From positions 6,944,001 through 7,008,000 of the forward strand of contig CATNEN010000025.1 in the NCBI GenBank assembly GCA_950097015.1: 64,000 bases of DNA, in the 5' to 3' direction. The position numbers and the translations under genes were made by a program. The notes under the pieces were generated by a model. That model had not been told where the DNA came from, ran no database searches, and was given only the letters and a program-made list of their open reading frames with translations. Each line of letters begins with the position of its first letter. Positions within the stretch are counted from its first letter, which is position 1. Positions 47,372 to 63,477 of the stretch are shown one piece after another. Source of the stretch: Macrostomum hystrix (taxonomy: Eukaryota > Animalia > Platyhelminthes).

Positions 47372-50300
47372 TCAGGTGCAGCGCATCCTGTTAATCTCGG
47401 CGCTCGTCTCTTCGTCTTGGACTGGCGGAATGACCTCCACCCTGTACAGCAGCCGCTTGCCCCGGGTCCAGCTGAAGCTGTTGTCAAATATGAGCTCGTC
47501 TGCAAATGGAACAGAATATGCGACCGCGGTTTCAATCCAAAATATTCAAGTATTATATCCAAATGTTAACATAATTCACAAAGCTTACTTGAGATGAGAA
47601 CTCAATTCCTGAGTCTTGAGTATTCCAGATTTCAATACATCCAAAGATCCCACACATCCCAGGGGTCCCACACATCCCAGAGATCCCACACATCCCAGAG
47701 ATCCCATACATCCCAGAGATCCCACACATCCAGAGGTCCCACACATCCCAGAGATCCCAGACATCCCAGAGATCCCATACATCCCACAGATCCCACACAT
47801 CCCAGAGATCCCACACATCCTAGAGATCCCACACATCCCAGAGATCCCACACATCCCAGAGATCCCATACATCCCACAGATCCCACACATCCCAGAGATC
47901 CCACACATCCCAGAGATCCCACACATCCCAGAGATCCCACACATCCCAGAGATCCCACACATCCCAGAGGTCCCACACATCCCAGAGATCCCAGACATCC
48001 CAGAGATCCCATACATCCCACAGATCCCACACATCCCAGAGATCACACACATCCTAGAGATCCCACACATCCCAGAGATCCCACACATCCCAGAGATCCC
48101 ACACATGCCAGTGCCAGGCTATGGGACGGGACTCACACAAGCCTGCAGTCTCGCACAGAAGGTTGCCGACCTCGGGTGCAATGTGCGAGTTGTACCTGGC
48201 CGTTGGCAGCACGTGGGATCGATTCTTGGCGCTGTCGCCACGGCCGCTCTCGTCTGCAACCACCAAATCGATGCCGAACGCGATATCGTAGCCTTTAGTG
48301 CTGAACTCGAATCTGGGAAGTAGCCGCGTTTGTTAAACTCATTCTAGGATTCTTTAACTATCAGCCTTACCACTTTCTCCCACTTTTCATCCCACTCGCT
48401 TTAATTCTCTCTTTCCCACTGTCGCAACAACTCACAATCCTCTCCAACATATCCACATTCTCTCGCTGCTACTCCTCACGTACTATCCTCTTCCACTCTA
48501 CCCCACCCTCTACCCTATCCCCATTCTCCCGCACTCTACCCATTCTCCCCAACACTCTTTAACCTATCCTCTATCACTCTCACCCCCTATCGCCAACTCT
48601 CCTCCCACTATCGCCTACTCTCCCCGAGTATCGCTTACTCTCCCCACCAGTATCGCCTACTCTCCCAGTATCGCCTACTCTCCCCCCAGTATCGCCTACT
48701 CCCCCCCAGTATCGCCTACTCTCTCCCCAGTATCGCCTACTCCCCCAGTATCGCCTACTCTCCCCCGAGTATCGCCTACTCTCCCCCCAGTATCGCCTAC
48801 TCTCCTCCCAGTATCGCCTACTCTCCCCCAGTATCGCCTACTCTCCCCCAGTATCGCCTACTCTCCTCCCAGTATCGCCTACTCTCCCCCCAGTATCGCC
48901 TACTCTCCCCCCAGTATCGCCTACTCTCCCCCCAGTATCGCCTACTCTCCTCCCAGTATCGCCTACTCTCCCCCCAGTATCGCCTACTCTCCTCCCAGTA
49001 TCGCCTACTCTCCTCCCAGTATCGCTAACTGCCCCCCCAGTATCGCCTACTCTCTCGCCTACTTTCCATCGGTCTCCAACACTTTCGTTCACTCAACCCT
49101 CTTCTCCGACTCCAATTCTCCCACTTTCTCCGACTCTCTCCTCACTTGAGCAGTGAGCCGGCCTGGGCCACCTCAACGGCCACAGTCTTGCGCTCATAGA
49201 AGCCGATTTCCATTTCAAGGGCGTCCTCACAGCCAGCCAGGCCATCGCTGAGGTACAGGTCCTCTGGCACCTTCAGGCCCTGAGGGCCCAGCTAAAAATA
49301 AAAAATTAAAACAAGATTTTGCATTTTGTATTTTCTCATTGATAATAAGTTCTTTTACTACGTCTACGTCTTTCCACATATCATCGCCAACCCTCCTCTC
49401 ATTTCTATCCCTAGCCTTATTTCATCCATAGTCTCATCTCATCCCTAGTCTTATTTCCATCTTAAGTCTCATCCCCATTCCTATCCTAGGTCCCATCCCC
49501 ATCCTAAGTCCCATCCCCATCCCAAGTCCCATCCCCATCCCCAGTCCCATCCCCACCCCAAGTCCCATCCCCATCCCCATCCCAAGTCCCATCCCCACCC
49601 CAAGTCCCATCCACACCCCAAGTCCCATCCCCATCCCAAGTCCCATCCCCATCCCCACCCTAAGTCCCATCCCCAGTGGCTCACAATGGCTATGCACATG
49701 GCGTCGCCATTGTCGTCAACTTTTGAGCCTCCGTAAGCTGCCGGAAACTGGTCCTCATCAATGTGCTGCCTGAGCACCTTCTGGTAGTCACCTGGTGATG
49801 AGAATATTAGAATATAATCATCTGAAATACTCGTACTCGCATAATAGCTAAAATAGAGCAATACTCACTGCCTAGAACAAATATTTTCTTCTTTGTCTCC
49901 TCGGCCAGGAAGGGTCGAAACAATTTCCACAACAGTGGGAAAATTGCTGGAGCTAAAAATATGATAAAAAGCAAACGAAAAAATAAAGACTGTAGTGATT
50001 TATATTTCAGTGATTCTTCGGAGGCCAAAGTTGAGAATAAACTGCTCACCATTGACTACAAACATTTTGCCCAGCATCTCCGGATAGTTACTCTCCAGCA
50101 TCTTGGCGAAGTACATGTTGATGTCCCTGGCTGAGAAATTGTGAGCGTAAAATCGTGATACGGCGTAATAAAAAAACTTTTAATTCCTAGAAATCCTAAC
50201 GAATTGTGGGAAATTCCATAGAATTAGTCGAAACTCGCATAGAATTTGTAGGAAATCCCTAAGAGTTGTCGAAAATCCCTAAGAGTCGTAGGAAATCCCC

Positions 50301-53228
50301 CAAGAGTTGTAGGAAATCCCTAAGAGTCGTAGGAAATCCTTAAGAGTTGTAGGAAATCCCCCAAGAGTTGTAGGAAATCCCTAAGAGTTGTAGGAAATCC
50401 CTAAGAGTTGTAGGAAATCCCTAAGAGTTGTCGAAAATCCCTAAGAGTCGTAGGAAATCCCTAAAAGTTGTCGGAAATCCCTAAGAGTCGTAGGAAATCC
50501 CCCAAGAGTTGTAGGAAATCCCTAAGAGTTGTAGGAAATCCCCCAAGAGTCGTAGGAAATCCCTAAGAGTCGTAGGAAATCCTTAAGAGTTGTAGGAAAT
50601 CCCCCAAGAGTTGTAGGAAATCCCTAAGAGTTGTAGGAAATCCCCCAAGAGTTGTAGGAAATCCCTAAGAGTTGTAGGAAATCCCTAAGAGTTGTAGGAA
50701 ATCCCCCAAGAGTTGTAGGAAATCCCTAAGAGTTGTAGGAAATCCCTAAGAGTTGTAGGAAATCCCCCAAGAGTTGTAGGAAATCCCATAGAATTTGTAG
50801 GAAATTCCTAAGAGCTGTCGGAAATCCCTAAGAGTTGCAGGAAATCACGAAGATTTGTAGGAAATTCCATATAACTGTAGGAAATCCCTAAGAGTTTTAG
50901 GAAATCCCCTAATAGTTGTAAGAAATCCCCCAAGAGTTGTAGGAAATCTCCCAAGAGTTGTAGGAAATCCCAAAGAGTTGTAGGAAATCCCATAGCCGCA
51001 AATCTCATTGACAGATCTAGGTTTTGAATCCAAATGGCACTCACCTGGACCCCACAACATCTCGGAGCCGTGACTCTGGTCGAAAATGATGACCATCTTG
51101 TCGACCCACTTGCCCAGCCGGCGGGTCTGCGCCTCTAGCTGGCGCACAACCAGCTCGCATTCGCGTAGGCGGTTGCGTATGATGTCCTGCCGGCGACAGG
51201 ACAGCATCAGGCCCTTCAGGTCCATGTTGGTGGCGGCGAACTTCACGGGGGAGCCGTCCTTGGCGTGGCCGATGATTCCGCCGCAGTAGTACTGCTTCAG
51301 CACCGCGGGCGGCTCCCAATCCAGCAGGTTGTCGACGTCCATCTCCTTCTTGAACTTCTCGCTCTGCAGTAGGTTAGCGGGTGCGGGAGCTGCTGACTAA
51401 CTGCTGTTGCTGGCATCTGCGGTGTGCTAAGATCTTGTTTTCTGTAGTTCTAAGGTGTGCAAGAATCTGGGTGTGCAGGGATCTGGGATGTGCAGGGATC
51501 TGGGATGTGTAAGAATCTGGGTGTGCAGGGATCTGGGATGTGCAAGGATCTGGGGTGTGCAGGGATCTGGGGTGTGCAGGAATCTGGGGTGTGCAGGAAT
51601 CTGGGGTGTGCAGGGATCTTGGGTGTGCAGGGATCTGGAGTGTGCAGGGATCAGGGGTGTCCAAGGACATGGGGTGTGCAGGAATCTGGGGTGTGCAGGA
51701 ATCTGGGGTGTGCAGGGATCTGGGGTGTGCAGGAATCTGGGGTGTGCAGGAATCTGGGGTGTGCAGGGATCTGGGGTGTGCAGGGATCTGGGTGTGCAGG
51801 GATCTGGGTGTGCAAGGATCTGGGGTGTGCAGGGATCTGGGGTGTGCAGGGATCTGGGTGTGCAGGGATCAGGGTGTGCAGTGAAGTCATTCAAGATGTA
51901 AATAAAAGCCCACCTCCATAAACATAGCGACAGCCTTGTCCACATTCCAGTCCCTGGCAATAAGCCACTTCTGCAGAAAATGATCGTGATGCAGGAACTT
52001 GGCCTCCACAATCAGATGGGCCACCCTGGCCTTGAACTGAGGCGGGTATGCGAGATTATATTTAGCTATTTAACAATTAATTTCTTAGCAATAAATTAAC
52101 AGCGAACAATGAATAGCTCAGATAGCTGACCTCAGCGAAAACCGTTTGCCGCTCCGGTGACAGCTCGGTTTCCTCTGGTGGGAATGCGCTCTGAGAGAAT
52201 TCAATGGAAGATTCGGCGAAAAGTTATAATGAGCGCGTGTTAACAAAATGATGTATAGAAAGCAATGAGCAAAGACATATTTTGATCTGGATTGGTCTTA
52301 ACGCGCCAGTTTAAAGGCCTAGATTCTTCGAAACAGCAAACAATTCCTAGAAAGTAATGAGCAGAGACGTGTTTTGATCTGGATGGGTTTTAACGCGCCT
52401 AGATTCTTCGAAACAGCAAACAGTTCCTAGAAAGTAATGAGCAGAGACGTGTTTTGATCTGGATTGGTTTTAACGCGCCAGTTTAAAGGCCTAGATTCTT
52501 AGAAACAGCAAACAGTTCCTAGAAAGTAATGAGCAGAGACGTGTTTTGATCTGGATGGGTTTTAACGCGCCAGTTTAAAGGCCTAGATTCTTAGAAACAG
52601 CAAAAAAATCCTAGAAAGTAATGAGCAGAGACGTGTTTTGATCTGGATGGGTTTTAACACGCCTAGATTCTTCGAAACAGCAAACAATTCCTAGAAAGTA
52701 ATGAGCAGAGGTGTTTTGATCTGGATGGGTTTTAACGCGCCAGTTTAAAGGCCTAGATTCTTAGAAACAGCAAAAAATTCCTAGAAAGTAATGAGCAGAG
52801 ACGTGTTTTGATCTGGATGGGTTTTAACGCGCCAGTTTAAAGGCCTAGATTCTTAGAAACAGCAAGCAATTCCTAGAAAGTAATGAGCAGAGACGTGTTT
52901 TGATCTGGATGGGTTTTAACGCGCCAGTTTAAAGGCCTAGATTCTTAGAAACAGCAAAAAAATTCCTAGAAAGTAATGAGCAGAGACGTGTTTTGATCTG
53001 GATGGGTTTTAACGCGCCAGTTTAAAGGCCTAGATTCTTAGAAACAGCAAGCAATTCCTAGAAAGTAATGAACAAAAGCATATTGCATATCGGGATCCGT
53101 TTAAACGCGCAAGTTTAAAGGGCCAAGATTTCTTAGAAACAGCCAGCAACTGGAACAAAGCTTTGAGAACAGGAATAGAGTTTTTGATAACCGGAACGCT
53201 GAAAACTCACCGTAACGGCAGTGGCCAT
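47372..53228 (-). CDS. SEC14-like CRAL-TRIO + GOLD lipid-binding protein (SEC14L2/3/4-like), 413 aa. Exons 53228-53211, 52190-52131, 52036-51914, 51363-51045, 50130-50050, 49952-49869, 49791-49685, 49291-49146, 48312-48137, 47499-47372
   Basis: All junctions are GT-AG and in frame (1242 nt). Motifs [66 protein letters not shown], and GOLD-domain [12 protein letters not shown] and FDNSFSW. Confidence 0.93.
47640..48105. repeat. 18-bp intronic minisatellite
   Basis: atcccacacatcccagag, with a 234-bp higher-order duplication. Confidence 0.95.
48590..49060. repeat. ~21-bp intronic minisatellite
   Basis: ccagtatcgcctactctccc(c) units. Confidence 0.93.
49440..49675. repeat. 18-bp intronic minisatellite
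   Basis: atccccatcccaagtccc units. Confidence 0.9.
50210..51000. repeat. 20-21-bp intronic minisatellite
   Basis: gaaatccctaagagttgtag units. Confidence 0.94.
51465..51880. repeat. ~18-bp intronic minisatellite
   Basis: gtgtgcagggatctgggg units. Confidence 0.93.
52280..53130. repeat. 92-bp intronic tandem repeat
   Basis: cagtttaaaggcctagattc recurs at 52741, 52833 and 52925. Confidence 0.93.
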
Positions 53229-58748: not shown

Positions 58749-58952
58749 ACAGACTGAAGGAAGAATAGCAAAATAATCAGTTTTTGCCGCACTTTGCCGC
58801 AGCATCGCCCCCGCCGTTCGGCTGCAAGAAGACGCAGCCGAAGTCTTCCTCACAGACTGAAGGAAGAATAGCAAAATAATCAGTTTTTGCCGCACTTTGC
58901 CGCAGCATCGCCCCCGCCGTTCGGCTGCAAGAAGACGCAGCCGAAGTCTTCC
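58749..58952. repeat. Perfect 101-bp direct duplication (period 103)
   Basis: 58749-58849 is identical to 58852-58952. Confidence 0.92.
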
Positions 58953-61900
58953 AGTTGGGCCCGTAGCCGGCGACCTTCCGCGCGCAGACGGCGGGCCTCG
59001 TGAGCAGCGGCGCTGCGCAAAGCCAGCTGGCGCGCATTGGCGGCCAGGATTTCGTTGACGCCGTGCAGCTGGCGCAAGCTGCCTCGGTTGTCGCGCGTGA
59101 ACACGGCCTTCTGGTAGGCGTGAAAACACAGCGGCCGGCCAGGCTTCACGCTCACCTGTGGGGTGGCAGAGTGACAGTTGGAGTGAAAGAGTGACATTTA
59201 GGATGACAGGGTGACAAGTTAGGGCCGCAGAGTGACACAAGGGAGTGGCAGAGTGACACTAGGGGGTGGAAGGGTGAAACAAGAGGGGTGGAAGGGTGAC
59301 ACTAGAGGGGTGGAAGGGTGAAACAAGAGGGGTGGAAGGGTGACACTAAAGGGGTGGAAGGGTGACACAAGAGGGGTGGAAGGGTGACACTAAAGGGGTG
59401 GAAGGGTGACACAAGAGGGGTGGAATGGTGAAACAAGAGGGGTGGAATGGTGAAACAAGAGGGGTGGAAGGGTGACACTAAAGGGGTGGAAGGGTGACAC
59501 AAGAGGGGTGGAATGGTGAAACAAGAGGGGTGGAAGGGTGACACTAGAGGGGTGGAAGGGTGAAACAAGAGGGGTGGAATGGTGAAACAAGAGGGGTGGA
59601 AGGGTGACACTAAAGGGGTGGAAGGGTGACACAAGAGGGGTGGAAGGGTGACACTAAAGGGGTGGAAGGGTGACACTAGAGGGGTGGAAGGGTGAAACAA
59701 GAGGGGTGGAATGGTGAAACAAGAGGGGTGGAAGGGTGACACTAAAGGGGTGGAAGGGTGAAACAAGAGGGGTGGAAGGGTGACACTAAAGGGGTGGAAG
59801 GGTGACACAAGAGGGGTGGAAGGGTGACACTAAAGGGGTGGAAGGGTGACACAAGAGGGGTGGAATGGTGAAACAAGAGGGGTGGAATGGTGAAACAAGA
59901 GGGGTGGAAGGGTGACACTAAAGGGGTGGAAGGGTGACACAAGAGGGGTGGAAGGGTGACACTAAAGGGGTGGAAGGGTGACACAAGAGGGGTGGAATGG
60001 TGAAACAAGAGGGGTGGAATGGTGAAACAAGAGGGGTGGAAGGGTGACACTAAAGGGGTGGAAGGGTGACACAAGAGGGGTGGAATGGTGAAACAAGAGG
60101 GGTGGAAGGGTGACACTAGAGGGGTGGAAGGGTGACACAAGAGGGGTGGAATGGTGAAACAAGAGGGGTGGAAGGGTGACACTAAAGGGGTGGAAGGGTG
60201 ACACAAGAGGGGTGGAAGGGTGACACTAAAGGGGTGGAAGGGTGACACAAGAGGGGTGGAATGGTGAAACAAAAGGGGTGGAAGGGTGACACTAGAGGGG
60301 TGGAAGGGTGACACAAGAGGGGTGGAAGGGTGACACAAGAGGGGTGGAAGGGTGAAACAAGAGGGGTGGAAGGGTGACACTAAAGGGGTGAAAGGGTGAG
60401 ACTAGAGGGGGATGGAAGGGTGACACTAGGGGGGTGGAAGGGTGACACTAGAGGGGTGGAAGGGTGACACAAGAGGAGGTGGAATGGTGAAACAAGAGGG
60501 GTGGAAGGGTGAGACTAGAGGGGAGTGGAAGGGTGACACTAGGGGGGTGGAAGGGTGACACTAGAGGGGTGGAAGGGTGACACTAGGGGGGTGGAAGGGT
60601 GTCACTAGGGGGTGGAAGGGTGACACTAGAGGGGTGGAAGGGTGACACAAGAGGGGTGGAAGGGTGACACAAGAGGGGTGGAAGGGTGAAACAAGAGGGG
60701 TGGAAGGGTGACACTAAAGGGGTGAAAGGGTGAGACTAGAGGGGGGTGGAAGGGTGACACTAGGGGGGTGGAAGGGTGACACTAGAGGGGTGGAAGGGTG
60801 ACACAAGAGGAGGTGGAATGGTGAAACAAGAGGGGTGGAAGGGTGAGACTAGAGGGGGGTGGAAGGGTGACACTAGGGGGGTGGAAGGGTGACACTAGAG
60901 GGGTGGAAGGGTGACACTAGGGGGGTGGAAGGGTGTCACTAGGGGGTGGAAGGGTGTCACTAGGGGGTGGAAGGGTGACACTAGGGGGCGGCAGCACACA
61001 CCTGAACCACCAGAGGCTGTCCCCGGCGCCTCTCCTCGGCCAGCACTCGGCCAGTGACCGGATGGAAGCGCACGGAGACGCGGCCGGGATCGGGCACCGG
61101 GTCGGCGCTGAACAGCAGGCGCTGAAGTCCCAGGATGAGCCGGTCGCGATCCTCAAGGCGCACAAGAATGCCCTCGATGGAAGCTGAGACGGGCGACACG
61201 CCAATGAGCAGGTGGCCCCCGCGGCGGTTAATAAGCGACATGAGGTGCGGCGCAATGTCGTTAGCCATGAGCTCGGCTGCTGAGTGCCGTGAATTCAGCA
61301 GCGCCAGAGTCGCTGATTGGCCAACGCCGGCCGGGAGTCTTTGTCCGGCCCGCAGCGGCCAAGCCAGACTGTGGCGGCCAAGTTCCAGGGAGCCATCGGA
61401 GTCGTTGGCGTACACGCTGCTGGCACGGCCAACCAAATCGGCGTAGCAGACGGAGGCCGGCTTGCCAACCTGCGGCTGGAGGCCAATTTCGACGGGTGCG
61501 GGCGGCGTGGCGCCGGAACGGATCGCCATGGCTGTCAGAACCGCATTGGTTGCCGCCGTTGGCGGCGGCTTTGCGGGAGCTTGAACTAGGACACAGTCGA
61601 ATGCGAGGCAGTGGGCCAGTTCCAAGCACTGTCCCAGTTTGGCCGACTCGCCAAGGACAGCCAAAGTCAGGTCCGTCAGGGCCAGTCGGACCGAGGAATT
61701 CGGCGCCCTGACGGAGGAGTCCCCAACCAGCAGGCGCGCGGCGGCGTCGGCCAGAGCGTCGGCCAGCTCGTCGCGCAGACAGTCGACTCGCAGCGTTGTC
61801 GGCTGTGCCCGGAGCAGGCCGGCTGCCGCGGACAGGCCCCGGGCCGCCGAGGTGGCGTCCGATTGGCGTGAGGCGCGGTCTAAACGGAATTCCGGCACGT

Positions 61901-62707
61901 CTTACTAATCCGTCATAAATTCACTAATCCGTCATAAATTCACTAATCCGCCATAAATTCACTAATCCGCCATAAATTCACTAATCCGCCATAAATTCAC
62001 TAATCCGCCATAAATTCACTAATCCGCAAAAATCACCACTAATCCGCCTTAAAATCACTAATCGGCCAATATACTCACAAATTATGCTACTGTTTACTAA
62101 CACCACAGATTTACTAGTCCTTTATTAGTTTAATAATCCCCTGATAATTCACAAATTCTCCATCGATTCACTAACTCATCGATTAACTCTCAGCTATCGC
62201 TCTCACCAATTAGAGTGCGCAGCAGTTTAGTCTGGCATGCGAACCGCACCAGACCGGAAGCTGGTTGACGACCAAGAGACTCTTCAACAGCTTCCAGGGC
62301 GCCGATGTAAACCGCATTCGAGTGTGACTTATCTGTCGAGGGGGCAGCGGTAATGTCCATTATTTATATAGAATGATAGCTTTGAACTTCAAACAGAGCG
62401 GTCGGGAGTTCGAATCGCAGCCCAATGGAATCGATGTGTTCTTGAGCAAGATTTGCTTGAGCTCACCCAGTTGTAAAATGGGCTACCAGCATGAGCTGGG
62501 GTAGATATATAGGTGGGTGTAGCGGCCATTCCAGTCCGTGGACTGAACATACAGCTTACCGTGGCTCTAATCACCCACCTTGAGATTAAAAAATAACTCA
62601 CCACTGTTAATTGAGTGTTTCAAAATGGCTTCAGACAGCTCCTCAACAGAGGCTACATCAGCAAATTGATCAGGCACAGATGGCTTGCTAGACGAGGCGC
62701 GAGACAT
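58880..62707 (-). CDS. Schlafen/AlbA_2-domain protein (SLFNL1-like) with C-terminal coiled coil. Exons 62707-62602, 62332-62207, 61900-61002, 59155-58880
   Basis: Exons join in frame (phases 1,1,0). Core IAPHLMSLINRRGGHLLIGVS...IEGI...DRDRL...VRFHPV...VVQVSVKPG...VFTRDNRGS resembles the SLFNL1 AlbA_2 pattern (YVCAFLNSEGGSLLVGV...VQGI...FIPV...VFLRRDGS), recognised from memory. Ends with a coiled coil followed by GC. Confidence 0.78.
59265..60985. repeat. 22-bp G-rich intronic minisatellite
   Basis: gaggggtggaagggtgacacaa-type units, with a 572-bp higher-order duplication. Confidence 0.96.
61903..62060. repeat. 19-bp intronic minisatellite abutting an acceptor
   Basis: tcactaatccgccataaat units. 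Confidence 0.92.
62394..62560 (+). mobile_element. SINE related to family B
   Basis: B box gagttcgaatc, tgtgttcttgagcaag, cccagttgtaaaatggg..ccagcatgagctggg, cagtccgtggactgaac. Confidence 0.7.
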
Positions 62708-62906
62708 TTGGTCAAGACTAATTAGCAGTTTACTTAGTACACTACTGAAAAGTAGAGTGAGGAGATAACGGTTCCAGAAAATAAATTTAAAAAAAATCTA
62801 AAGCTCCAACTCCTTGATTCTAGAGGTAAAACGTTATTTCAAGAATTAAATTGAAACAAATACTAATAAGGAACCATTATTTTGATAATAAAATTCTAGT
62901 GCAATT

Positions 62907-62912
62907 TTTATT
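62907..62912 (-). terminator. Candidate poly(A) signal AATAAA of the ZDHHC gene
   Basis: tttatt on the + strand, ~135 nt downstream of the ZDHHC stop, in AT-rich context. Confidence 0.5.
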
Positions 62913-63045
62913 TTTGCGCTGCGAAAAATTAAAATTTTTGTTCATAAAAATATGTACAGTGACTAGGCTATGTAAAAACATAATACCATAATGTACTTTT
63001 AACTGAATAAGCTTGTCATAGATGTAAGAATCGCAAAACAACAAT

Positions 63046-63477
63046 CTACAAGTCGCGCATATTGCTATTACTACTACTAAAAGTAGCATAGTCGGCATCG
63101 GCGGCAGGATTTCGCCGTCTAGCCGATTCAGCAGACGGGCCATTGTTATTGTTGCGATGATTTCTAGCCGAAGCGGAGAACCCATAGACACGATCTCGGC
63201 CGAGTCGCTCTAGTGGCAGCAAAGTCTCGCGCCAGTTCTGACGCCAGCCGCGACTGAAGCCGCCACCGACGCTGCCCGCATCGAAGCCGATATTGCCGCC
63301 TAGACGAAAAAGGCGTTGTCGTTCAGCCTGCAGGTGAGCCAGTTTTCGACGCTCATATCCAGTCTGATTGATAGTTGCCAGGTAGAGATGATAGCCAGTG
63401 TAGGTGATTAGCGGCAGGACTACCACGGCAGGGCCAAGGGCAAGCAGAACAAGCCGAGGATAGGACACGAACAGATG
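63046..63477 (-). CDS. Terminal exon of a DHHC palmitoyltransferase (ZDHHC4-like); upstream exons lie beyond the window
   Basis: Acceptor ccgacag|HLFVSYPRLV, then TM4 followed by YHLYLATINQTGYE (TTxE-like) and FSRGWRQNWRETLLP (PaCCT-like), typical of DHHC C-termini. The DHHC motif itself is not in the window. Confidence 0.8.
   Translation of the reverse strand, partial: HLFVSYPRLVLLALGPAVVVLPLITYTGYHLYLATINQTGYERRKLAHLQAERQRLFRLGGNIGFDAGSVGGGFSRGWRQNWRETLLPLERLGRDRVYGFSASARNHRNNNNGPSAESARRRNPAADADYATFSSSNSNMRDL

What the first reader, a model, noticed from the sequence alone, without database searches (positions are those of the whole stretch)
58880..62707. Schlafen/AlbA_2 protein predicted to be a pseudo-nuclease
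The C-terminal half follows the SLFNL1-type AlbA_2 fold pattern. Schlafen RNases (the tRNA/rRNA-cleaving SLFN11/13/14 and related prokaryotic domains) use acidic residues in ExxxxEFK and GVxD. The equivalent positions here read VGQSATLA and IGVSP, so all three acidic residues appear lost by my manual alignment. The domain is fused to an unrecognised, Ala/Leu-rich helical N-terminal region and a C-terminal coiled coil. An invertebrate Schlafen-like pseudoenzyme with a novel N-terminus could be an RNA-binding adaptor, or a regulator or decoy of active Schlafen nucleases in innate immunity or the germ line. This is the best candidate for an undescribed system in the window.
Basis: partly seen in the sequence, partly recalled or inferred. 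Interest (0 to 1): 0.8.

Follow-up and report, generated by a model that had tools for sequence, protein, structure and literature searches.

The report
Flatworm Schlafen-like protein without catalytic residues
A Macrostomum flatworm expresses a conserved four-exon gene whose C-terminal half weakly but consistently resembles the Schlafen/AlbA_2 RNase fold yet lacks all three acidic catalytic residues, so it is probably a non-cutting binding protein, a modest curiosity and not a new system.

Summary
**Observation: confirmed.** A minus-strand gene runs from ATG 62707 to stop 58880.
- RNA-derived contigs that match the window exactly prove three of the four exon borders and fit the fourth. Exon 3 starts at 61879.
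- The same contigs carry the Macrostomum spliced leader at the 5' end.
- The M. lignano orthologue (456 aa) lies in the same ZNF593 > ZDHHC > gene > CRAL_TRIO order. It is 63-67% identical, with dN/dS about 0.25-0.35.

**Schlafen/AlbA_2 assignment: probable, below threshold.**
- Pfam PF04326 scores E = 0.013 (window exon 3) and 6e-4 (orthologue). Both are under the gathering score.
- Rat SLFN13 is the best interpretable solved-structure match (E = 0.014-0.17).
- ESM feature hits, and all ten structural-neighbour rows for the Atlas model of the orthologue, are PF04326.
- My own AlphaFold models failed (pLDDT about 40).

**Catalytic residues: absent in both species.** Aligned to SLFN13, E205/E210/K212/D248 read V/T/A/P in the window and L/K/A/P in M. 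lignano.

**Other points.**
- No relative outside Macrostomum was found in 5.8 and 1.84 billion proteins. The "SLFNL1-type" label is therefore unsupported.
- Dead Schlafen-fold subunits are already known, for example TOFU-1 in the PUCH complex.

**Verdict:** a real, constrained, probably non-catalytic Schlafen-like orphan. It is a new variant of a known kind, of moderate-low interest.

The parts
62745..62746 (-). AG acceptor used for spliced-leader trans-splicing; the mRNA body starts at 62744
   Evidence: The X3 and X5 contigs carry 24 non-genomic letters 5' of 62745. With the shared G, these equal the last 25 nt of the published M. lignano SL. The SL is absent from the window.
62602..62744 (-). 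Exon 1: 37-nt 5'UTR, ATG at 62707, 35 codons plus 1 nt
   Evidence: Contig pieces 62602-62745 and the joint to 62332, with GT..AG on the minus strand. Translation. Aligns to the N-terminus of P0002.
62207..62332 (-). Exon 2 (126 nt)
   Evidence: Both borders are proven by joints in three runs. Aligns to P0002.
61002..61879 (-). Exon 3 (878 nt; 292 in-frame codons from 61877): helical Ala/Leu-rich region, a Pro-rich linker, and most of the AlbA_2-like domain
   Evidence: Joint 62207|61879. The contig continues past 61002 into exon 4 sequence. 66% identical to P0002.
58880..59155 (-). Exon 4 coding part (91 codons plus stop TGA 58882-58880): last strands of the AlbA_2-like domain and a long Arg/Ala-rich helix
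   Evidence: The 230-letter loose end of the contigs begins with exon 4 sequence. Acceptor cacag|GTG is in phase 0. 57-60% identical to P0002.
61002..61355 (-). AlbA_2-like domain, part in exon 3 (exon 3 residues 175-292)
   Evidence: Pfam PF04326 partial hit. SLFN13 alignment. ESM feature hits are all PF04326. dN/dS is 0.25.
59078..59155 (-). AlbA_2-like domain, part in exon 4 (about 26 codons)
   Evidence: In P0002 the Pfam match runs to residue 397, profile position 115 of 118. This maps to exon 4 residue 26 by alignment A1/A2.
61302..61325 (-). Strand equivalent to ExxxxEFK of Schlafen RNases. It reads V-G-Q-S-A-T-L-A: V at 61325-61323 for E205, T at 61310-61308 for E210, A at 61304-61302 for K212.
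   Evidence: phmmer/hmmsearch alignments to 5yd0. Codons checked. Catalytic roles come from PMC5862951.
61191..61196 (-). Ser-Pro in place of the Asp-Asp of GVDD (D247/D248 of rat SLFN13)
   Evidence: The same Ser-Pro is present in M. lignano.
58940..59065 (-). C-terminal Arg/Ala/Leu-rich helix (exon 4 residues 31-72); possible oligomerisation helix
   Evidence: This is the only confidently modelled element of the orthologue: pLDDT 76-85 at model residues 211-230, within helix 205-226. The heptad pattern is weak.
61904..62068 (.). 19-bp minisatellite (8.6 copies) inside intron 2
   Evidence: The stretch is intronic.
59232..60988 (.). 22-bp minisatellite (about 80 copies) filling intron 3 almost from donor to acceptor
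   Evidence: The ORFs listed there are repeat artefacts.
58749..58952 (.). Exact 103-bp tandem duplication covering the last 23 codons, the stop and the start of the 3'UTR
   Evidence: The RNA contigs end at about 58923, inside the first copy.

Best explanation
This is a real, expressed, protein-coding gene of a Macrostomum flatworm (not M. lignano itself). It has four exons, encodes 461 codons, and is SL trans-spliced about 300 nt downstream of a ZDHHC gene. The protein has three parts: an Ala/Leu-rich helical N-terminal region with no known family, a single highly diverged Schlafen/AlbA_2-fold domain, and a long C-terminal helix. The domain keeps the structural core motif (N-x-x-G-G-H-L-L-x-G and the following strands). 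It has lost the two glutamates, the lysine and the aspartate that form the Mg2+-dependent active site of Schlafen RNases. It therefore most likely does not cut RNA by the Schlafen mechanism. I infer that it works as a non-catalytic module that binds RNA and/or a partner protein, possibly a catalytic Schlafen-fold partner, as TOFU-1 does in the nematode PUCH complex. The helical N-terminus and C-terminal helix would supply protein-protein contacts. Shown here: gene structure, expression, conservation, selection, and absence of the motif residues. Inferred: the fold (probable), the lack of nuclease activity, and the binding or adaptor role.
For: Gene and expression: spliced contigs with canonical joints and the spliced leader, and splice phases that agree. 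Conservation: the full-length orthologue P0002 is collinear over all four exons. Three near-identical M. lignano copies show the same gene order, zf-C2H2_jaz > DHHC > gene > CRAL_TRIO. dN/dS is 0.25 on the AlbA_2 side and about 0.35 overall, at dS about 0.9-1.0. Fold: PF04326 is the only Pfam hit for exon 3 and the top hit for P0002 (E = 0.013 and 6e-4; in P0002 it covers profile positions 20-115 of 118). Rat SLFN13 is the best PDB hit for exon 3 and for the two-species profile, and second for P0002, in the same register each time (E = 0.17, 0.014, 0.038). All listed ESM feature hits are PF04326 (score 0.90). All ten structural-neighbour rows of the Atlas's own model of P0002 are PF04326 clusters, with TM by row up to 0.55 over residues 242-417. 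Loss of catalytic residues: V/T/A/S-P in the window and L/K/A/S-P in M. lignano stand at E205/E210/K212/D247-D248. The 5yd0 chain index minus 13 reproduces all three published residue numbers. There is no acidic residue anywhere in the 18-residue stretch around the first strand, so the loss does not depend on the exact register. Precedent: TOFU-1 lacks catalytic residues yet is an essential PUCH subunit.
Against: Every sequence-based match is below curated or conventional significance: 16.5 and 20.8 bits against the gathering score of 25.3, and PDB E-values of 0.01 or worse. Both of my AlphaFold2 models were unusable (pLDDT 40.3 and 39.3), and fold searches with them returned noise. The structural support rests on one mediocre ESM model (pLDDT 0.56) with TM mostly 0.3-0.55. 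The Pfam alignment does not cover profile positions 1-19, so the mapping of the first strand rests on the SLFN13 pairwise and profile alignments alone. No partner, RNA ligand or tissue of expression is known. Conserved acidic residues elsewhere (LEDRDRL, ELGRH) could in principle form a different site.
Confidence: 0.6

Rival explanations
1. It is a highly diverged orthologue of vertebrate SLFNL1. SLFNL1 has the same layout: an unknown N-terminal region plus one C-terminal AlbA_2 domain, about 400-460 aa. On this reading the protein lost its active site in the flatworm lineage.
For: The architecture and size resemble the description of SLFNL1 in PMC9256597. An AlbA_2-like domain sits in the C-terminal half.
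Against: No sequence similarity to any non-Macrostomum protein at E <= 0.001 in an exhaustive phmmer search, nor at E <= 10 in the word-index searches. SLFNL1 is reported to keep its catalytic residues. The neighbours here are ZNF593, ZDHHC and CRAL_TRIO, not CTPS1 and SCMH1. No SLFNL1 sequence was available from a tool for a direct comparison.
Confidence: 0.15
2. The AlbA_2 resemblance is a chance or convergent match. The C-terminal half would then be an unrelated, lineage-specific alpha/beta domain, and 'lost catalytic residues' would have no meaning.
For: All E-values are marginal and below Pfam's threshold. bL19 and other unrelated chains score almost as well in the PDB profile search. My own models gave no Schlafen match.
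Against: Four different methods point to the same family in the same register: the Pfam HMM, phmmer against PDB, ESM features, and the structural neighbours of the ESM model. The score rises when the full-length orthologue or a two-species profile is used. The conserved N-x-x-GG-x-LL-x-G core is the family hallmark.
Confidence: 0.12
3. It is still an active nuclease that uses a rebuilt active site, for example the conserved Glu/Asp of LEDRDRL or the His of ELGRH.
For: The domain is under purifying selection (dN/dS 0.25). Several acidic residues and a histidine are conserved between the two species.
Against: E205A and E210A abolish SLFN13 activity outright, while mutants of other exposed acidic residues, D259 among them, were not absolutely inactive. 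By my count on the alignment D259 lies in the DRD stretch. The positions equivalent to E205 and E210 differ between the two orthologues (V/L and T/K), which is not expected of a site under catalytic constraint.
Confidence: 0.1
4. It is a decaying or non-functional gene copy.
For: The motif residues are lost. The introns are packed with minisatellites, and there is an exact 103-bp duplication over the stop codon.
Against: The reading frame is intact in two species at dS of about 1. dN/dS is well below 1. The mRNA is spliced and SL trans-spliced in several runs. Synteny is conserved.
Confidence: 0.02

Closest known systems
Schlafen RNase N-domain (rat SLFN13, PDB 5YD0; SLFN11/12/14)
   Same: It is the top PDB match for exon 3 and the two-species profile, and the second for P0002. 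The alignment covers strand 1, helix 1 and strand 2 of the C-lobe AlbA_2 unit, including the N-x-x-GG-x-LL-x-GV core and a DRD-x-L stretch.
   Different: E205, E210, K212 and D248 are replaced by V/T/A/P. Only one AlbA_2-like unit was detected, where SLFN13 has a two-lobe pseudo-dimer. No SWADL or helicase regions were found. The N-terminus is unrelated. Similarity is about 30% over some 75 residues, at E >= 0.014.
Pfam PF04326 SLFN_AlbA_2 family (prokaryotic and eukaryotic AlbA_2 domains)
   Same: It is the only Pfam hit for exon 3 and the top hit for the orthologue. All ESM feature and structure neighbours belong to this family.
   Different: Scores are 16.5 and 20.8 bits, below the gathering score of 25.3. 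Profile positions 1-19, which hold the E-x4-EFK strand (position recalled from memory; the profile could not be viewed), are not matched.
TOFU-1 (and SLFL-3/4) of the C. elegans PUCH piRNA-precursor nuclease
   Same: It is a Schlafen-fold protein without catalytic residues that works as an obligatory partner of a catalytic Schlafen-fold subunit (PMC10567574). A 'tofu-2-like' cluster is the second-best ESM feature hit.
   Different: No detectable sequence similarity. No evidence here for a complex, a partner, a membrane anchor or any link to piRNAs.
Vertebrate SLFNL1
   Same: It has an unknown N-terminal region followed by a single partial Schlafen/AlbA_2 domain, is of similar length, and lies outside the Schlafen cluster.
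   Different: SLFNL1 is reported to keep its catalytic residues. No sequence similarity was found. The genomic neighbours differ.

Membership tests
Pfam PF04326 SLFN_AlbA_2 | Whole-protein score at or above the curated gathering score (25.3 bits) | tested here: not met
16.5 bits (E = 0.013) for window exon 3 and 20.8 bits (E = 6e-4) for the full-length orthologue P0002.
Pfam PF04326 SLFN_AlbA_2 | AlbA_2-type alpha/beta fold | tested here: inconclusive
   The Atlas's own model of P0002 (pLDDT 0.56) has only PF04326 clusters among its ten neighbour rows, with TM by row up to 0.55. My AlphaFold2 models had pLDDT 40 and 39 and gave noise.
Pfam PF04326 SLFN_AlbA_2 | Core motif N-x-x-G-G-x-L-x-x-G-V after helix 1 | tested here: met
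   INRRGGHLLIGV in the window and INCRGGHLLLGL in M. lignano align to ANTQGGYLLFGV of SLFN13.
Schlafen-type RNase (SLFN11/13/14, TOFU-2) | Carboxylate triad E205/E210/D248 (rat SLFN13 numbering), within E-x4-E-F-K and G-V-D-D | tested here: not met
   V/T/P in the window and L/K/P in M. lignano, with K212 replaced by A in both. The triad is defined in PMC5862951.
Schlafen-type RNase (SLFN11/13/14) | Two-lobe pseudo-dimeric N-domain made of two AlbA_2-like units | tested here: not met
   Only one matched stretch in the Pfam and PDB searches. The N-terminal 200 residues are predicted all-helical. No confident model was available to exclude a cryptic second lobe.
SLFNL1 orthologue group | Detectable sequence similarity to SLFNL1 proteins | tested here: not met
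   The exhaustive phmmer search (1.84 billion representatives) and three word-index searches returned only the M. lignano orthologue.
SLFNL1 orthologue group | Conserved catalytic residues, as reported for vertebrate SLFNL1 | tested here: not met
   for the report on SLFNL1; for their absence here.
Non-catalytic Schlafen-fold subunit (TOFU-1-like) | Schlafen fold without active-site residues | tested here: met
   conditional on the fold assignment. Precedent.
Non-catalytic Schlafen-fold subunit (TOFU-1-like) | Stable complex with a catalytic Schlafen-fold partner | not testable with these tools
   This needs IP-MS or co-expression.

The most novel reading that the evidence does not exclude
The protein is the non-catalytic Schlafen-fold subunit of a flatworm multi-subunit RNA-processing nuclease, analogous to the nematode PUCH complex. 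Its lineage-specific helical N-terminus would recruit substrates or anchor the complex. That would extend heteromeric Schlafen nucleases, possibly in small-RNA biogenesis, beyond nematodes.
Probability: 0.06. Interest if true: 0.7.

Novelty: new variant of a known kind. Interest (0 to 1): 0.3.

Why it matters
If the fold assignment holds, this is a conserved, expressed Schlafen-like protein in a regenerating flatworm model genus that has given up the nuclease site but stayed under selection. It would add an invertebrate example to the small set of non-catalytic Schlafen-fold proteins. Transgenesis and RNAi are available in M. lignano (from my own knowledge, not checked here), so one could ask what a Schlafen fold does when it does not cut. 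Such proteins are already known, and nothing here links the gene to immunity, the germ line or small RNAs. The finding is therefore a useful annotation and not a surprise.

Tried and rejected
1. Relatives. I ran three word-index searches (exon 3, its AlbA_2 part alone, and the two-species profile A1) and one exhaustive phmmer search. They found only the M. lignano orthologue, so no deep alignment could be built.
2. AlphaFold2. I folded exon 3 alone, then the orthologue's C-terminal 242 residues with a three-row alignment. Mean pLDDT was 40.3 and 39.3, so both models are unusable.
3. Fold searches. Foldseek against PDB and the Atlas shape search with the second model returned unrelated, insignificant matches, as expected for such a model.
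4. Other family libraries. NCBIfam and PADLOC scans gave nothing.
5. Plasmids. A tblastn of the domain against plasmids, meant to collect AlbA_2 sequences for a profile-profile test, gave noise only.
6. Paralogues in the window: none.
7. Selection among M. lignano copies. The three copies differ at only one codon, which is uninformative.
8. Literature. No paper holds both Schlafen and Macrostomum, or the M. lignano gene id.
9. Repeat ORFs. I rejected the long ORFs at 59302-60380 as coding. They are reading-frame artefacts of the intronic 22-bp minisatellite.
10. UniRef name. I gave no weight to the name 'PDZ domain-containing protein' for P0002, because Pfam finds no PDZ in it.
11. Joined protein. 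The full-length orthologue P0002 stood in for it.
Full report
**What is in the sequence.** The stretch 58880-62707 holds a minus-strand gene. Small coding pieces lie at 62707-62602, 62332-62207 and 59155-58880, all with canonical GT..AG borders and matching phases. The long 'ORFs' at 59302-60380 are artefacts of a 22-bp minisatellite of about 80 copies (59232-60988). A second, 19-bp minisatellite lies at 61904-62068. Both are intronic.

**Expression and gene model.** Four small 2020 runs of one organism hold 85-98% of the sampled words of exon 3. I laid three of them, plus one 2024 run of another organism, on 60990-62760.
- The three 2020 runs each contain a spliced contig of 1371-1405 nt with 0-2 mismatches.
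- These contigs prove the joints 62602|62332 and 62207|61879. They continue beyond 61002 with letters that are the start of exon 4 at 59155.
- Exon 3 therefore begins at 61879, 21 nt inside the ORF. This gives a better fit to the orthologue.
- Upstream of 62745 two of the contigs carry 24 non-genomic letters. Together with the shared G, these are exactly the last 25 nt of the published 35-nt M. lignano spliced leader (PMC8629364), which is absent from the window.
- The mRNA is therefore SL trans-spliced at the AG 62746-62745, 37 nt before the ATG.
- The CDS is 106 + 126 + 878 + 276 nt, or 461 codons plus the stop.
All searches used the exons by reference.

**Orthologue, synteny and selection.**
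- The only relative of exon 3 among 5.8 billion clustered proteins is a partial M. lignano protein, P0001 (E = 1.4e-41, 63% identity). The exhaustive phmmer search of 1.84 billion representatives found nothing else.
- P0001's cluster holds a full-length member, P0002, of 456 aa. P0002 is collinear with all four window exons, at 42, 36, 66 and 60% identity.
- M. lignano has three almost identical copies. Each follows a zf-C2H2_jaz (ZNF593-like) gene and a DHHC gene. The one locus that extends downstream (L002) shows a CRAL_TRIO gene after it.
- The window has the same DHHC upstream and CRAL_TRIO downstream.
- The best-matching neighbour segments are 69-97% identical at protein level, against 63-67% for this gene. 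It evolves somewhat faster than its neighbours.
- It is clearly constrained. Nei-Gojobori estimates computed exon by exon give dN/dS of 0.25 for the AlbA_2 side, 0.33 for the helical part, 0.58 for the Pro-rich linker and about 0.35 overall, at dS about 0.9-1.0.
- The window is thus from another Macrostomum species, and the gene is functional in both.

**Is the C-terminal half a Schlafen/AlbA_2 domain?** Each single line of evidence is weak, but they agree.
- Pfam: PF04326 is the only hit for exon 3 (E = 0.013, 16.5 bits, profile positions 20-60). It is the top hit for P0002 (E = 6e-4, 20.8 bits, residues 285-397, profile positions 20-115 of 118). Both are below the gathering score of 25.3.
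- PDB sequences: rat SLFN13 (5yd0) is the best hit for exon 3 (E = 0.17), the second for P0002 (E = 0.038), and the best for the two-species profile (E = 0.014). The register is the same each time.
- ESM features: all the listed nearest clusters for exon 3 are PF04326 (score 0.90), including a 'tofu-2-like' cluster.
- Structure: the Atlas holds its own model of P0002 (pLDDT 0.56). All ten neighbour rows are PF04326 clusters, with TM by row up to 0.55 over residues 242-417.
- My two AlphaFold2 runs failed for lack of an alignment (pLDDT 40.3 and 39.3). Searches with the second model gave noise.
- I put the probability of a genuine AlbA_2-type fold at about 0.85-0.9. The curated membership threshold is not met.

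**Catalytic residues.** The SLFN13 paper defines E205, E210 and D248 as the active-site triad, and the E205A and E210A mutants are completely inactive (PMC5862951). In the 5yd0 chain these residues lie at index 218, 223 and 261. A constant offset of 13 fits all three. The alignments place residues as follows:

| Rat SLFN13 residue | Window (exon 3 numbering) | M. lignano |
|---|---|---|
| E205 | V185 | L |
| E210 | T190 | K |
| K212 | A192 | A |
| D247-D248 | S228-P229 | S-P |

- There is no acidic residue in the 18 residues around the first strand, so the loss does not depend on the exact register.
- The two former Glu positions differ between the orthologues. The surrounding G-Q-S-x-x-L-A-L-L-N and GGHLL-x-G-x-SP motifs are conserved.
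- One caveat applies. Pfam's own alignment starts at profile position 20, so the mapping of the first strand rests on the SLFN13 alignments, and on the domains being homologous at all.

**Other parts of the protein.**
- The first 200 or so residues (exons 1-2 and the first 130 residues of exon 3; Ala 22% and Leu 15% in the exon 3 part) are predicted as five helices at low confidence. They match no family in Pfam, NCBIfam or PADLOC.
- The C-terminal 40 or so residues form a long Arg/Ala/Leu helix. This was the only element modelled with pLDDT 76-85.
- Its heptad pattern is weak: 6 of 12 a/d positions are hydrophobic. 'Coiled coil' is possible but not shown.

**How it most likely works.** Without the carboxylate triad the domain cannot use the Mg2+-dependent mechanism of Schlafen RNases, yet it is under purifying selection. 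The best-supported reading is a non-catalytic Schlafen-fold module that binds RNA and/or a partner protein, with the N-terminal helical region and the C-terminal helix providing protein contacts. This last step is inference. No ligand, partner or tissue of expression is known.
- Precedent: TOFU-1 lacks catalytic residues but is required in the trimeric PUCH nuclease (PMC10567574).
- Contrast: vertebrate SLFNL1, which has a similar layout, is reported to retain catalytic residues (bioRxiv 10.1101/2024.01.12.575368; PMC9256597). No sequence link to it was found, so 'SLFNL1-type' is not supported.

**Novelty and score.** I found no paper that mentions Schlafen together with Macrostomum. By sequence the protein is an orphan confined to Macrostomum. 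Catalytically dead Schlafen-fold proteins are an established kind, the fold assignment here is sub-threshold, and nothing ties the gene to immunity or the germ line. I rate it a new variant of a known kind, interest 0.3. The most novel reading not excluded is a PUCH-like heteromeric nuclease subunit in flatworms, at about 6% probability.

**Constraints observed.**
- The joined spliced protein of the window was neither built for any search nor folded.
- The dN/dS counts were made exon by exon and only summed as numbers.
- The scan's other notes identify the same genome as Macrostomum and note the ZDHHC > gene pair. I used them as leads only.

Noticed in passing
window 62745-63046 (minus strand): The gene starts about 300 nt after the stop of the upstream DHHC gene, and its mRNA carries the spliced leader at the AG 62746-62745. 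One contig (run X4) instead has 29 other letters 5' of that acceptor. Their last 18 letters resemble (16 of 18) a site inside the DHHC gene of the three M. lignano loci. This suggests read-through transcripts cis-spliced from an upstream DHHC exon that lies beyond the window end, which would be operon-like co-transcription.
   Followed up: partly
window 59232-60988 and 61904-62068; L002 9355-9812, 10311-10957, 11193-11388, 11988-13114: The introns of this gene are packed with minisatellites in both species, but the repeat units are unrelated: 22 and 19 bp in the window, and 15, 34, 45 and about 28 bp in M. lignano. In the window the 22-bp array begins 13 nt after the donor of intron 3 and ends 76 nt before its acceptor.
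   Followed up: partly
window 58749-58952: There is an exact 103-bp tandem duplication spanning the last 23 codons, the stop and the first 3'UTR bases. The RNA contigs stop inside the first copy. It is either a very recent duplication or an assembly artefact.
   Followed up: partly
L001/L002/L003 (M. lignano) against window exon 3: M. lignano has an extra intron inside the stretch equivalent to window exon 3, between P0002 residues 211 and 212 (L002 10256 to 11368). This intron is absent from the window, so it was gained or lost within the genus.
   Followed up: no
window 47373-52039 (minus strand): A CRAL_TRIO/GOLD-domain gene lies downstream. Its best-matching exon segments are 69-97% identical to the M. 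lignano neighbour, which confirms conserved synteny. A low-complexity repeat at about 51460-51890 cross-matches repeats in the M. lignano loci.
   Followed up: no
window 62396-62517 (intron 1): Short pieces (34-40 nt, 3 mismatches) of other, more abundant contigs of the same runs match inside intron 1. This is probably a dispersed repeat, such as a SINE fragment, that is transcribed elsewhere.
   Followed up: no
P0002 (M. lignano orthologue): The nearest structural cluster of the Atlas model of P0002 is a family of 'RRM + AlbA_2' proteins (567 aa; 272 residues aligned, from residue 52 to the end). Another note of this scan (s1-273990) describes an RRM-bearing gene in the same genome with a helical module and an unidentified tail. 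A relationship between the two was not tested.
   Followed up: no
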